Assembly: GCA_023334545.1 (NCBI GenBank)
Contig: JAADVB010000013.1
Location: 1 to 64,000 of the forward strand
Origin: Salisapilia sapeloensis CBS 127946
Taxonomy: Eukaryota; Protista; Oomycota
Direction of reading: 5' to 3'
DNA length: 64,000 nt
The translations under genes and the position numbers were made by a program. Below the pieces are notes generated by a model. The model was not told where the DNA came from, ran no database searches, and worked only from the letters and a program-made list of their open reading frames with translations. The first letter of the stretch is position 1, and each line of letters begins with the position of its first letter. This document shows positions 43,021 through 45,011 of the stretch, one piece after another.

Positions 43021-45011
43021 ATGCAGAAGAGCGAGCCTATTCTGCCGGTGCGCAATGCAAGTGGTGGCAAATGGAGCTTGGAGCAAGCTGAGAAAGCATT
43101 GCAGACTATTGGAGAATACATAGATGGACTTGCATCCCACCAGGTACGGCTGAACAAGCGATAAAATCTATATAACGATGGCGCGGAAGATGAATTGGAT
43201 GGAATCGATAGCTGCCGATGACCATAGTGGAAAAATGGGAAGACATGCGCAATTGTCCATCTTCAGATGCATTGCAGCAACTTTATTCGATATGTACGTA
43301 GATTGCATACTGTTCATAGGCAAATTTCTTTAACTATTGGCATGAGCAGTATTGCAAATGATCGACTATCCTTCACAAACATCATCGTCTCGAGCTCTCA
43401 TCGAGTACGGTCGCGAGTGGGCTGCTGATACACTTCTGGACATTTCACAGTCTCAATCGATCCAGCATGAATTTATTACAGATACATCCATGGCGGGTAT
43501 GTTGGCACGGACTTCCTCCAACGCTTCCAATTCGCTCAGTCGGAATGCTTTGGAGCAACAGACACGCGACTTCATTCTATCTGTTCTCTCCAATAGATCG
43601 ATTAACTTTGATGCTGTTGGATTTAGCAACGTACTTGACACAGTAGCGAAGGTCTTTAGCTTGGAAGAGGACGATAGTCTGTTCATCGAGACTGTACAAA
43701 CGCTCATTCAGCACGAACAGCATTACAACCTACCTTCCTCTTTTTTATATCGACTCTATGATGCACGTGTCGACACAAGTGATAGTCAAACGAATAAAAA
43801 CAAACTTGTCTTCGACATGTTCGACGACGTCAGTAAACTCTCCCTTTGCGCGAATTCACCTCGACTATGGCATCATCAGGTATAACTCTTTCAATCACCC
43901 ACGTCTCATCAGTTTATGTCATTTTATCCATAGCTAGAGAAATGGATGCAAGATGCTATACTCTCTCCATTCCTACCCATGTCCAGTGTCTTACCTCCAG
44001 CTTCTGTCTTTGCGCATCATAAAGACCATGCTCCTTATTTACATCTCTTTCTTCAACAGTACTTATCGAAACATAGGACCATCCTTCAAAGCGCACGCAT
44101 GCGAGAGCTGTATGCAACGTTGCCCAACTACATAAATAAAAGTCGACGGCACTTGAACGATATAAAGCATCTTTTGAGGGATGATCAAGTTCATCTATTC
44201 TCTACCAGACAGATGAACACACCCAAATGCCTTTCAGCTATCACTGCGTTGGATCAGAAGTTGATGGCACTGGATGAGAGCAGAGCAGAGGAGGAATGGA
44301 GGCGGTTGGTGGAAATTCCGTTTGTGACGGAAACAATCATGTCTATCCTCTTCGCATCTAAAGCAGAGATACAAGCGTTTAAAAATGAGGATATAGAGAC
44401 TACTAGAAAGACTGTGACTGCTGTCTTATCGTGGATATTAAGCTTCGTGGAGATGGAAGCAGTGGCGCATATAGATACAACCATATGCAGTCTATTATCC
44501 GATCTAGGGGCTGTTGGAAACTTTAAGGAAGCAAGTAGGCACTTGAGAAAGAAGCGGTCTCAATGGACGTCTCGACTGCTTATCGTAAAGCTTCGGTTGG
44601 TCTGGTGCTGGCTATTAAGTGGTTTGGATCTTCGAAGTGAGGAAAGCCAGGAAGACATGGATGCGATGAAAAGCGTCTTGGACAGCATCGAATACGCTTG
44701 TCGACAATCCATTGAAAAGGAACAGCAGAGGTATGTGTAGCCTACGTACATGAAGCACACACACCATATTCTAATAAGTTGCTAGACCTTTTATAATAGA
44801 ACTAATTGTCCAGTTCCTTGCTGATGTCGAGTACAAGTGGCAAGACAGAGAGTACAAATTATTATCCAACTACCACATGAGTGCTATCGAATGGATACGA
44901 AAGGTTGTTCGTCTATTGGATTTCCAAAGTGAAGAGAAACGAGTCGACTTGTCTGGACAGGTCGAAGCACGTTTCGAAAGCATCTTCAAATCCACTGAAC
45001 AGGAAGAGTAA
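43021..45011 (+). CDS. Six-exon alpha-helical protein (577 aa), candidate FANCC-like
   Basis: Exons 43021-43143, 43190-43293, 43350-43404, 43451-43879, 43934-44730, 44786-45011 splice in frame (gene model confidence about 0.8); FANCC identity rests on remembered motif collinearity only. Confidence 0.5.

What the first reader, a model, noticed from the sequence alone, without database searches (positions are those of the whole stretch)
43021..45011. Hidden six-exon orphan that looks like an oomycete FANCC
Seen: three ORF fragments plus three small exons splice with canonical 46-56 nt introns into one 577-aa helical protein. Inference, from remembered human FANCC (558 aa), is that the C-terminal ~250 residues are collinear. 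Pairs: CLSAITALDQKL vs WLQTLKHISELL; EEWRRLVEI vs ESWFLFIHF; TAVLSWILSF vs TALLWLLAF; LIVKLRL vs LIRHLLL; IVQFLADVEYKW vs IIGFLDQTLYRW. Established: FANCC was long considered animal-specific and was only recently recognised in plants as part of a FANCC-E-F complex. A stramenopile orthologue would push this module deeper into eukaryote evolution.
Basis: partly seen in the sequence, partly recalled or inferred. Interest (0 to 1): 0.75.

Follow-up and report, generated by a model that had tools for sequence, protein, structure and literature searches.

The report
Divergent oomycete FANCC-like repair gene
A real, spliced gene for a helical protein of about 585 residues, conserved but unnamed across oomycetes, whose predicted fold matches the human DNA-repair protein FANCC far better than any other solved structure, so water moulds probably have this Fanconi anaemia subunit.

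Summary
The gene is real. A profile built from oomycete homologues alone hits three open segments of the window in order and abutting (E 1e-17, 4e-30, 8e-9). GT-AG introns of 54-68 nt join them.

The best model has five exons and 585 aa, not six exons and 577 aa. It is not an orphan. About 30 oomycete proteins of similar length, all labelled hypothetical, are homologues.

No sequence method links the family to FANCC. Pfam Fanconi_C, profile searches of PDB sequences and the word search were all blank.

The fold does link it. An AlphaFold2 model of the full-length Phytophthora ramorum homologue (pLDDT 80, pTM 0.75) matches human FANCC (7kzp_C) at Z 18.6, 366 residues, 4.3 A. It is first of 48,161 chains; the runner-up scores Z 9.7.

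The window's exon 4 folded alone was inconclusive. NELF-C scored Z 9.8 and FANCC Z 6.5, although FANCC aligned in the expected register.

The genome also encodes FANCD2, FANCI and FANCL, plus weak FANCE-like and FANCF-like genes. A separate true NELF-C/D gene exists.

Verdict: probably a very divergent FANCC, a new member of a known kind, of moderate interest. The exons were never joined; each was searched by reference.

The parts
43021..43143 (+). Exon 1 (41 codons, from the ATG); tentative
   Evidence: Open frame from the ATG to a GTACGG donor. Only a non-significant similarity to the homologues' N-terminus; no profile hit.
43144..43211 (+). Intron 1, 68 nt, GT-AG
   Evidence: The only acceptor that opens the frame giving a stretch aligned to the homologues' N-terminal region.
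43212..43293 (+). Exon 2 (82 nt)
   Evidence: Its 27 codons align with the homologues just upstream of the conserved start of exon 3. Too short for a significant profile hit.
43294..43349 (+). Intron 2, 56 nt, GTACGT...AG (a NAGNAG alternative ends at 43346)
43350..43879 (+). Exon 3 (530 nt)
   Evidence: Family profile positions 47-232, E 1.2e-17; aligned.
43880..43933 (+). Intron 3, 54 nt, GTATAA...AG
   Evidence: Profile positions 232 and 233 abut across it.
43934..44730 (+). Exon 4 (797 nt), core of the protein
   Evidence: phmmer E 5.8e-11 to oomycete proteins. Profile positions 233-510, E 3.6e-30. AF2 model pLDDT 79. Aligns to FANCC 254-518 at Z 6.5.
44731..44785 (+). Intron 4, 55 nt, GTATGT...AG
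   Evidence: The split codon restores the residue that the homologues have at this point.
44786..45011 (+). Exon 5 (226 nt, including the TAA stop)
   Evidence: Profile positions 518-576, E 8.3e-9; aligned.

Best explanation
The locus encodes the oomycete counterpart of FANCC. This is the all-helical solenoid subunit of the FANCC-FANCE-FANCF module of the Fanconi anaemia core complex. Its sequence has diverged so far that only the fold is still recognisable.

Shown here:
- It is a spliced gene of about 585 aa.
- It belongs to a family conserved in Peronosporales and Pythiales.
- The predicted fold of a full-length family member superposes on human FANCC over about 410 collinear residues, far better than on anything else in the PDB.
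- The same genome encodes FANCD2, FANCI and FANCL, and has weak FANCE-like and FANCF-like genes.

Inferred from what is established for human and Arabidopsis FANCC:
- The protein binds the N-terminal part of FANCE on one surface and FANCF on another.
- It thereby links the substrate adaptor (FANCE, which brings FANCD2-FANCI) to the FANCL ubiquitin-ligase module.
- FANCD2-FANCI can then be mono-ubiquitinated at crosslink-stalled forks.
- In meiosis the module would restrain class II crossovers, as in plants.
For: Gene and family:
- establish the gene and its family. The profile hits are collinear at E 1e-17, 4e-30 and 8e-9.
- There are 31 oomycete homologues, all unnamed.

Fold:
- The AF2 model of P0005 has pLDDT 80.1 and pTM 0.75, from an alignment of oomycete sequences only.
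- In Foldseek, 7kzp_C is the only hit with TM 0.40/0.43 and probability 1.00; the rest are at or below 0.23.
- VIA-align gives Z 18.6, rmsd 4.3 A and 366 aligned residues. This is rank 1 of 940 re-aligned chains and rank 1 of 48,161 representatives, with runners-up at Z 9.8 and 9.7.
- 7kzp chain letters follow the FANC letters, since 7kzp_E is named group E protein.
- 7KZP was released in 2021. To my knowledge that is after the training cut-off of these AF2 weights, so the model is not a recalled structure.
- The separately modelled exon 4 aligns to FANCC 254-518. That is the register expected from the P0005 mapping.

Pathway context in G000:
- FancD2 E 6.8e-40, FANCI_S4 E 3.6e-21, FANCL_C E 1.2e-24.
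- FANCF, 24.3 bits against a cut-off of 24, at window 11989-12159(-).
- FANCE-like ORF: best PDB hit is human FANCE 2ilr_A at E 0.0044; Pfam 20.9 bits against a cut-off of 22.2.
- The gene is single copy and no other FANCC candidate was found.

Precedent: plant FANCC was detectable only by HHpred, at 16% identity.
Against: - No sequence-level support. Pfam Fanconi_C does not hit any exon, any of the 21 family members, or the genome in six frames.
- Profiles A1 and A2 do not hit any FANCC chain at E<=10. No PF02106 protein appeared in the word search at E<=10.
- The structural match comes from a homologue that is only about 25% identical to the window protein, not from the window protein itself.
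- The window's exon 4 alone ranks NELF-C first (Z 9.8) and FANCC nineteenth (Z 6.5, rmsd 6.2 A). Foldseek on it is uninformative.
- The language-model neighbours of P0005 put NELF-C/D (0.92) ahead of FANCC (0.90).
- Helical repeat proteins can reach high Z without common descent.
- The first ~130 residues were not superposed.
- The FANCE and FANCF partners sit at or below Pfam thresholds.
Confidence: 0.72

Rival explanations
1. An oomycete-specific alpha-solenoid scaffold of some other nuclear or cytoplasmic complex. Its resemblance to FANCC would be the generic similarity of HEAT-like repeat proteins, not common descent.
For: All sequence and profile searches against Pfam and the PDB are blank. 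The family was found only in oomycetes. The Atlas neighbours are a mixture of helical-repeat families. The exon-4 fragment gives only middling, mixed structural hits. The tool's own note says helical models can reach a best Z of about 14 without a clear relative.
Against: Z 18.6 lies above that range and 9 units above a flat continuum of solenoid hits (9.8, 9.3, 9.0 and so on). The match covers about 410 collinear residues of two proteins of nearly equal length. Foldseek TM is twice that of any other chain. The genome has the rest of the pathway, including likely FANCE and FANCF, and no other FANCC candidate.
Confidence: 0.2
2. A divergent paralogue of NELF-C/D (TH1 family), acting in RNA polymerase II pausing or a related transcription complex.
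For: NELF-C/D clusters are the nearest by language-model features (0.92, 6 of 30 hits). NELF-C is the best structural match of the exon-4 model (5l3x_B Z 9.8, 7pks_W Z 8.7) and reaches Z 8.6 for the full-length model. The length is similar, about 580 aa.
Against: The genome has a genuine TH1 gene elsewhere (PF04858 E 5.6e-51, G000:C601). Pfam TH1 hits none of the 21 family members even at E<=10. For the full-length model FANCC scores more than twice as high as NELF-C and aligns more residues at lower rmsd (366 at 4.3 A against 280 at 6.5 A). The Atlas tool itself flags its top family as probably wrong, since five or fewer of ten hits agree.
Confidence: 0.05
3. The locus is not one gene but two or three adjacent short genes or a pseudogene, and the splice model is an artefact.
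For: No RNA evidence was available. Exon 1 and exon 2 have no significant homology support.
Against: Three segments in three different frames match consecutive, abutting parts of one 605-position family profile. The GT-AG boundaries lie exactly at the frame changes. Full-length homologues of 540-620 aa span all three segments. There are no in-frame stops within the exons.
Confidence: 0.03

Closest known systems
FANCC (Fanconi anaemia group C protein; Pfam Fanconi_C PF02106; human chain 7kzp_C; Arabidopsis At3g60310)
   Same: A single all-helical solenoid of about 560-620 residues with no other domain. The predicted fold of the family superposes on human FANCC residues 149-558 (Z 18.6). It sits in a genome that has FANCL, FANCD2 and FANCI and likely FANCE and FANCF. 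Like plant FANCC, it is invisible to ordinary sequence searches.
   Different: About 12% identity in the structural alignment. No Pfam or profile hit at any threshold tried. The N-terminal ~130 residues were not superposed. Binding to FANCE and FANCF is untested. No FANCA was detected in the genome, so the complex would be of the reduced, plant-like type.
NELF-C/D (TH1, PF04858)
   Same: A helical-repeat protein of similar length. It is the nearest by language-model features and the best partial structural match for the exon-4 fragment (Z 9.8).
   Different: No TH1 profile match. The genome has its own clear TH1 orthologue. The full-length structural score is half that of FANCC.
Uncharacterised oomycete proteins (for example Globisporangium ultimum K3X4L4; Phytophthora ramorum KAL4151302.1/XP_067746270.1)
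   Same: True homologues. They are collinear over exons 3-5, with 16 invariant positions in the exon-4 region.
   Different: Only 24-28% identical to the window protein over exon 4, so the window comes from a lineage distant from Peronosporales and Pythiales. None of them carries any annotation.

Membership tests
FANCC (Fanconi_C, PF02106) | Match to the Pfam Fanconi_C profile at or above its cut-off | tested here: not met
   No hit for any exon, for seven homologues, for all 21 members at E<=10, or for the whole genome in six frames (that search had no positive control).
FANCC (Fanconi_C, PF02106) | Sequence or profile similarity to a solved FANCC chain | tested here: not met
   phmmer with exon 4 and exon 5, and hmmsearch with profiles A1 and A2, against PDB sequences at E<=10: no FANCC.
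FANCC (Fanconi_C, PF02106) | Profile-profile (HHpred-type) match, the test that established plant FANCC | not tested
hhalign needs one.
FANCC (Fanconi_C, PF02106) | FANCC fold: collinear superposition over most of the solenoid, standing clear of other helical-repeat proteins (family level) | tested here: met
   Model of P0005: 7kzp_C Z 18.6, rmsd 4.3 A, 366 residues, model 132-577 against chain 149-558. Runner-up Z 9.7-9.8 among 48,161 chains. Foldseek TM 0.40/0.43 against 0.23 or less.
FANCC (Fanconi_C, PF02106) | The same fold shown for the window's own product | tested here: inconclusive
Exon 4 alone (pLDDT 79, pTM 0.61): FANCC Z 6.5 over 206 residues in the expected register (254-518), but NELF-C scores Z 9.8.
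FANCC (Fanconi_C, PF02106) | Partners FANCE and FANCF encoded in the same genome | tested here: inconclusive
   FANCF: 24.3 bits against a cut-off of 24 for one exon at window 11989-12159(-) (22.1 bits in the genome scan). FANCE-like ORF on C623: Pfam 20.9 bits against 22.2, best PDB hit human FANCE 2ilr_A at E 0.0044. Likely real, but at threshold.
FANCC (Fanconi_C, PF02106) | Rest of the pathway present (FANCL ligase, FANCD2-FANCI substrate) | tested here: met
   FancD2 E 6.8e-40, FANCL_C E 1.2e-24, FANCI_S4 E 3.6e-21.
FANCC (Fanconi_C, PF02106) | Physical binding to FANCE and FANCF; requirement for FANCD2 mono-ubiquitination | not testable with these tools
   Needs multimer modelling or experiments.
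NELF-C/D (TH1, PF04858) | Match to the TH1 profile | tested here: not met
   None of the 21 members matches at E<=10. A separate gene on G000:C601 matches at E 5.6e-51.
NELF-C/D (TH1, PF04858) | NELF-C fold as the best structural match | tested here: inconclusive
   It is best for the exon-4 fragment (Z 9.8). For the full-length model it scores Z 8.6 against 18.6 for FANCC.

The most novel reading that the evidence does not exclude
Oomycetes, and so the stramenopile branch of SAR, retain a complete FANCC-FANCE-FANCF module attached to a reduced, plant-like Fanconi core: FANCL, FANCD2 and FANCI present, no detectable FANCA. Its FANCC has diverged beyond all sequence methods. This would give a third, independent supergroup for the module and support its presence in the last eukaryotic common ancestor. 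It would also point to an unstudied crosslink-repair and anti-crossover system in a major group of plant and animal pathogens.
Probability: 0.6. Interest if true: 0.55.

Novelty: new member of a known kind. Interest (0 to 1): 0.5.

Why it matters
FANCC was thought to be restricted to animals until 2023. It was then found in plants and a few fungi by remote-homology methods, and an origin in the last eukaryotic common ancestor was proposed (PMC10085685). No paper in the searched library mentions FANCC in stramenopiles, and every oomycete homologue is labelled hypothetical.

A fold-level assignment in oomycetes adds a third supergroup. It also gives a name and a testable function to an unannotated conserved gene family, and suggests that the C-E-F module works with FANCL, FANCD2 and FANCI in these organisms.

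The gain is incremental rather than surprising, because the ancestral-origin inference already existed. The assignment still lacks sequence-level or experimental confirmation.

Tried and rejected
- Pfam on each exon and on the homologues gave only sub-threshold noise.
- PDB sequence searches with exon 4, exon 5 and two family profiles were blank for FANCC.
- The word search with exon 4 alone was blank. This is a length-window effect: full-length relatives are longer than 1.75 times the query.
- The word search with profile A2 at E<=10 gave only oomycete proteins and no PF02106 carrier.
- Pfam Fanconi_C against the genome in six frames gave no hit. The control genomes cannot ring for this family, so absence is not shown.
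- ESM Atlas on P0005 gave a mixed list (NELF-C/D 0.92, FANCC 0.90, Mediator, Integrator), which is a lead only. On exon 4 all scores were below 0.9 and generic.
- Foldseek E-values were all above 1e-3 for both models. Only the TM-score and the VIA re-alignment singled out FANCC.
- NELF-C/D was considered and rejected.
It needs a 40-nt intron with a GTGGAA donor that removes residues aligned to the homologues.
- Left out by rule: joining the exons into one protein for any search or fold. Each exon was used by reference, and a natural full-length homologue served as proxy.

Full report
**The sequence.** The stretch 43021-45011 on the + strand holds no single long ORF. It holds three long open segments in different frames, plus short ones.

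GT-AG introns at 43144-43211, 43294-43349, 43880-43933 and 44731-44785 (68, 56, 54 and 55 nt, all beginning GTA) join five exons into 1758 nt, or 585 codons plus a stop. The next gene downstream is a convergent quinolinate phosphoribosyltransferase on the minus strand, so the 3' boundary is clean.

Every search and fold used single exons by reference, and a natural full-length homologue stood in for the whole protein.

**Is the gene real?** Yes.
- Exon 4 (265 aa) finds seven proteins in the 1.84-billion-protein library. The best is E 5.8e-11, at 26-30% identity.
- Those that carry a name are uncharacterised proteins of Globisporangium ultimum and Phytophthora ramorum.
- Profile word searches add about 30 more from Phytophthora, Peronospora, Hyaloperonospora, Plasmopara, Peronosclerospora, Nothophytophthora, Pythium and Globisporangium. 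All are hypothetical and none has a Pfam domain of its own.
- A profile built from these homologues without the window rows hits window 43349-43879 (positions 47-232, E 1.2e-17), 43934-44707 (233-510, E 3.6e-30) and 44784-44948 (518-576, E 8.3e-9). The hits are collinear and abut at the intron.
- Exon 2 aligns to the homologues just before the conserved start of exon 3.
- Exon 1 is supported only by its ATG, its donor site and a non-significant similarity at the right place.
I therefore prefer five exons and 585 aa.
- The gene is single copy in the 22.4-Mb assembly.
- No protein more than 30% identical to exon 4 appeared in the library. This genome's copy therefore seems to be unannotated, but it is not an orphan.

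**Sequence-level tests for FANCC.** All were negative.
- Pfam Fanconi_C matches no exon, no homologue at E<=10, and nothing in the genome in six frames.
- Single sequences and two family profiles match no FANCC chain among PDB sequences at E<=10.
- No PF02106 protein appears in the word search at E<=10.
- This is what the literature leads one to expect. Arabidopsis FANCC was linked to human FANCC only by HHpred (94% probability, 16% identity) and by five or more PSI-BLAST iterations (PMC10085685).
- A profile-profile test could not be run here, because no FANCC alignment was obtainable by reference.

**Fold-level test.**
- The full-length P. ramorum homologue (P0005, 615 aa) was modelled by AlphaFold2 with a 21-row alignment holding only this family. 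The result was pLDDT 80.1, pTM 0.75, about 33 helices and essentially no strands.
- Foldseek against the PDB gave no E-value below 1e-3. One chain stood out by TM-score: 7kzp_C, with TM 0.40/0.43 and probability 1.00, against 0.23 or less for every other listed chain.
- VIA-align re-alignment of Foldseek's candidates put 7kzp_C first, at Z 18.6, rmsd 4.3 A and 366 aligned residues (model 132-577 against chain 149-558). An independent exhaustive pass over 48,161 PDB representatives did the same. The runners-up were at Z 9.8 and 9.7, followed by a flat continuum of solenoids.
- Chain letters in 7kzp follow the FANC letters, because 7kzp_E is named Fanconi anaemia group E protein. The chain is numbered to 558. 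So 7kzp_C is FANCC.
- The tool warns that helical models may reach a best Z of about 14 without a known relative. Here 18.6 is above that, and the 9-unit gap to second place is the stronger argument.
- 7KZP was released in 2021. To my knowledge that is later than the training cut-off of these AlphaFold2 weights. The alignment contained no FANCC, so the resemblance is not a recalled template.

**Direct test on the window's own product.** Exon 4 was modelled alone with the family alignment (pLDDT 79.3, pTM 0.61). The result was inconclusive.
- NELF-C was best (5l3x_B Z 9.8, 146 residues). FANCC was nineteenth (Z 6.5, rmsd 6.2 A, 206 residues).
- Foldseek was uninformative.
- The FANCC alignment did, however, span the whole fragment (1-263) against FANCC 254-518. 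That is the register predicted by chaining exon 4 to P0005 248-522 and P0005 132-577 to FANCC 149-558.
- Language-model neighbours were no help for exon 4. For P0005 they were a mixture led by NELF-C/D (0.92), with FANCC fourth (0.90).

**The NELF-C/D rival.** I reject it.
- The genome has a clear TH1 orthologue elsewhere (E 5.6e-51).
- No member of this family matches the TH1 profile.
- The full-length model scores 8.6 with NELF-C against 18.6 with FANCC.

**Pathway context.**
- The assembly encodes FANCD2 (E 6.8e-40), FANCI (E 3.6e-21) and FANCL (E 1.2e-24).
- A 218-aa ORF on contig C623 has human FANCE as its best PDB match (2ilr_A, E 0.0044) and scores 20.9 bits against a cut-off of 22.2 for Pfam FA_FANCE.
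- FANCA was not detected. Absence is not shown by this.
- FANCC's two direct partners are therefore probably present, and this gene is the only candidate for the missing third member.

**Mechanism.**
- Shown: a conserved, single-copy, all-helical protein of about 585 aa whose family has the FANCC fold, in a genome with the FA ligase, its substrate and likely FANCE and FANCF.
- Inferred from human and Arabidopsis work: it bridges FANCE (the substrate adaptor) and FANCF (the link to the FANCL module), so that FANCD2-FANCI is mono-ubiquitinated at crosslink-stalled forks. It may also limit class II crossovers in meiosis.
- I put homology to FANCC at about 0.72. The generic-solenoid rival is at about 0.2. 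NELF-like and not-one-gene readings are at a few per cent each.

**Novelty.** I found no paper on FANCC in stramenopiles or oomycetes. All homologues are unannotated. Presence of the module in the last eukaryotic common ancestor was already proposed from plants plus animals. This is therefore a new, very divergent member of a known family, of moderate interest.

Noticed in passing
window 11989-12159 (-), within 10899-12186: This exon matches Pfam FANCF (PF11107) at 24.3 bits, just over the cut-off of 24 (E 2.1e-5), covering profile positions 13-62. It is a likely FANCF, the direct partner of FANCC, lying 31 kb from the FANCC-like gene on the same contig.
   Followed up: partly
L001:1411-2064 (+) = G000:C623:7287-7940: A 218-aa ORF whose best PDB sequence match is the human FANCE C-terminal domain (2ilr_A E 0.0044; 7kzp_E E 0.079). 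Pfam FA_FANCE scores 20.9 bits, just under the cut-off of 22.2. It is a likely divergent FANCE.
   Followed up: partly
G000:C1144:20917-24770 (+); G000:C549:12873-13592 (-); G000:C911:7699-7941 (+): Clear FANCD2 (E 6.8e-40), FANCI (E 3.6e-21) and FANCL (E 1.2e-24) genes. FANCA_CTD was not detected. The set resembles the reduced plant-type FA pathway.
   Followed up: partly
G000:C601:88192-90134 (-): A genuine NELF-C/D (TH1, PF04858) gene, E 5.6e-51. The oomycete therefore has at least this NELF subunit.
   Followed up: no
window 45150-45921 (-): A quinolinate phosphoribosyltransferase gene (QRPTase_C E 4.6e-28, QRPTase_N E 1.4e-9), split by at least one short intron and convergent with the FANCC-like gene.
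   Followed up: partly
P0031 (Peronospora effusa, 984 aa) and P0004 (840 aa): Some database models of this family are fused to unrelated N-terminal parts: a rhodanese/sulfurtransferase domain (PF00581) in P0031 and a 130-residue extension in P0004. These are probably gene-model mergers with neighbouring genes rather than real fusions.
   Followed up: no
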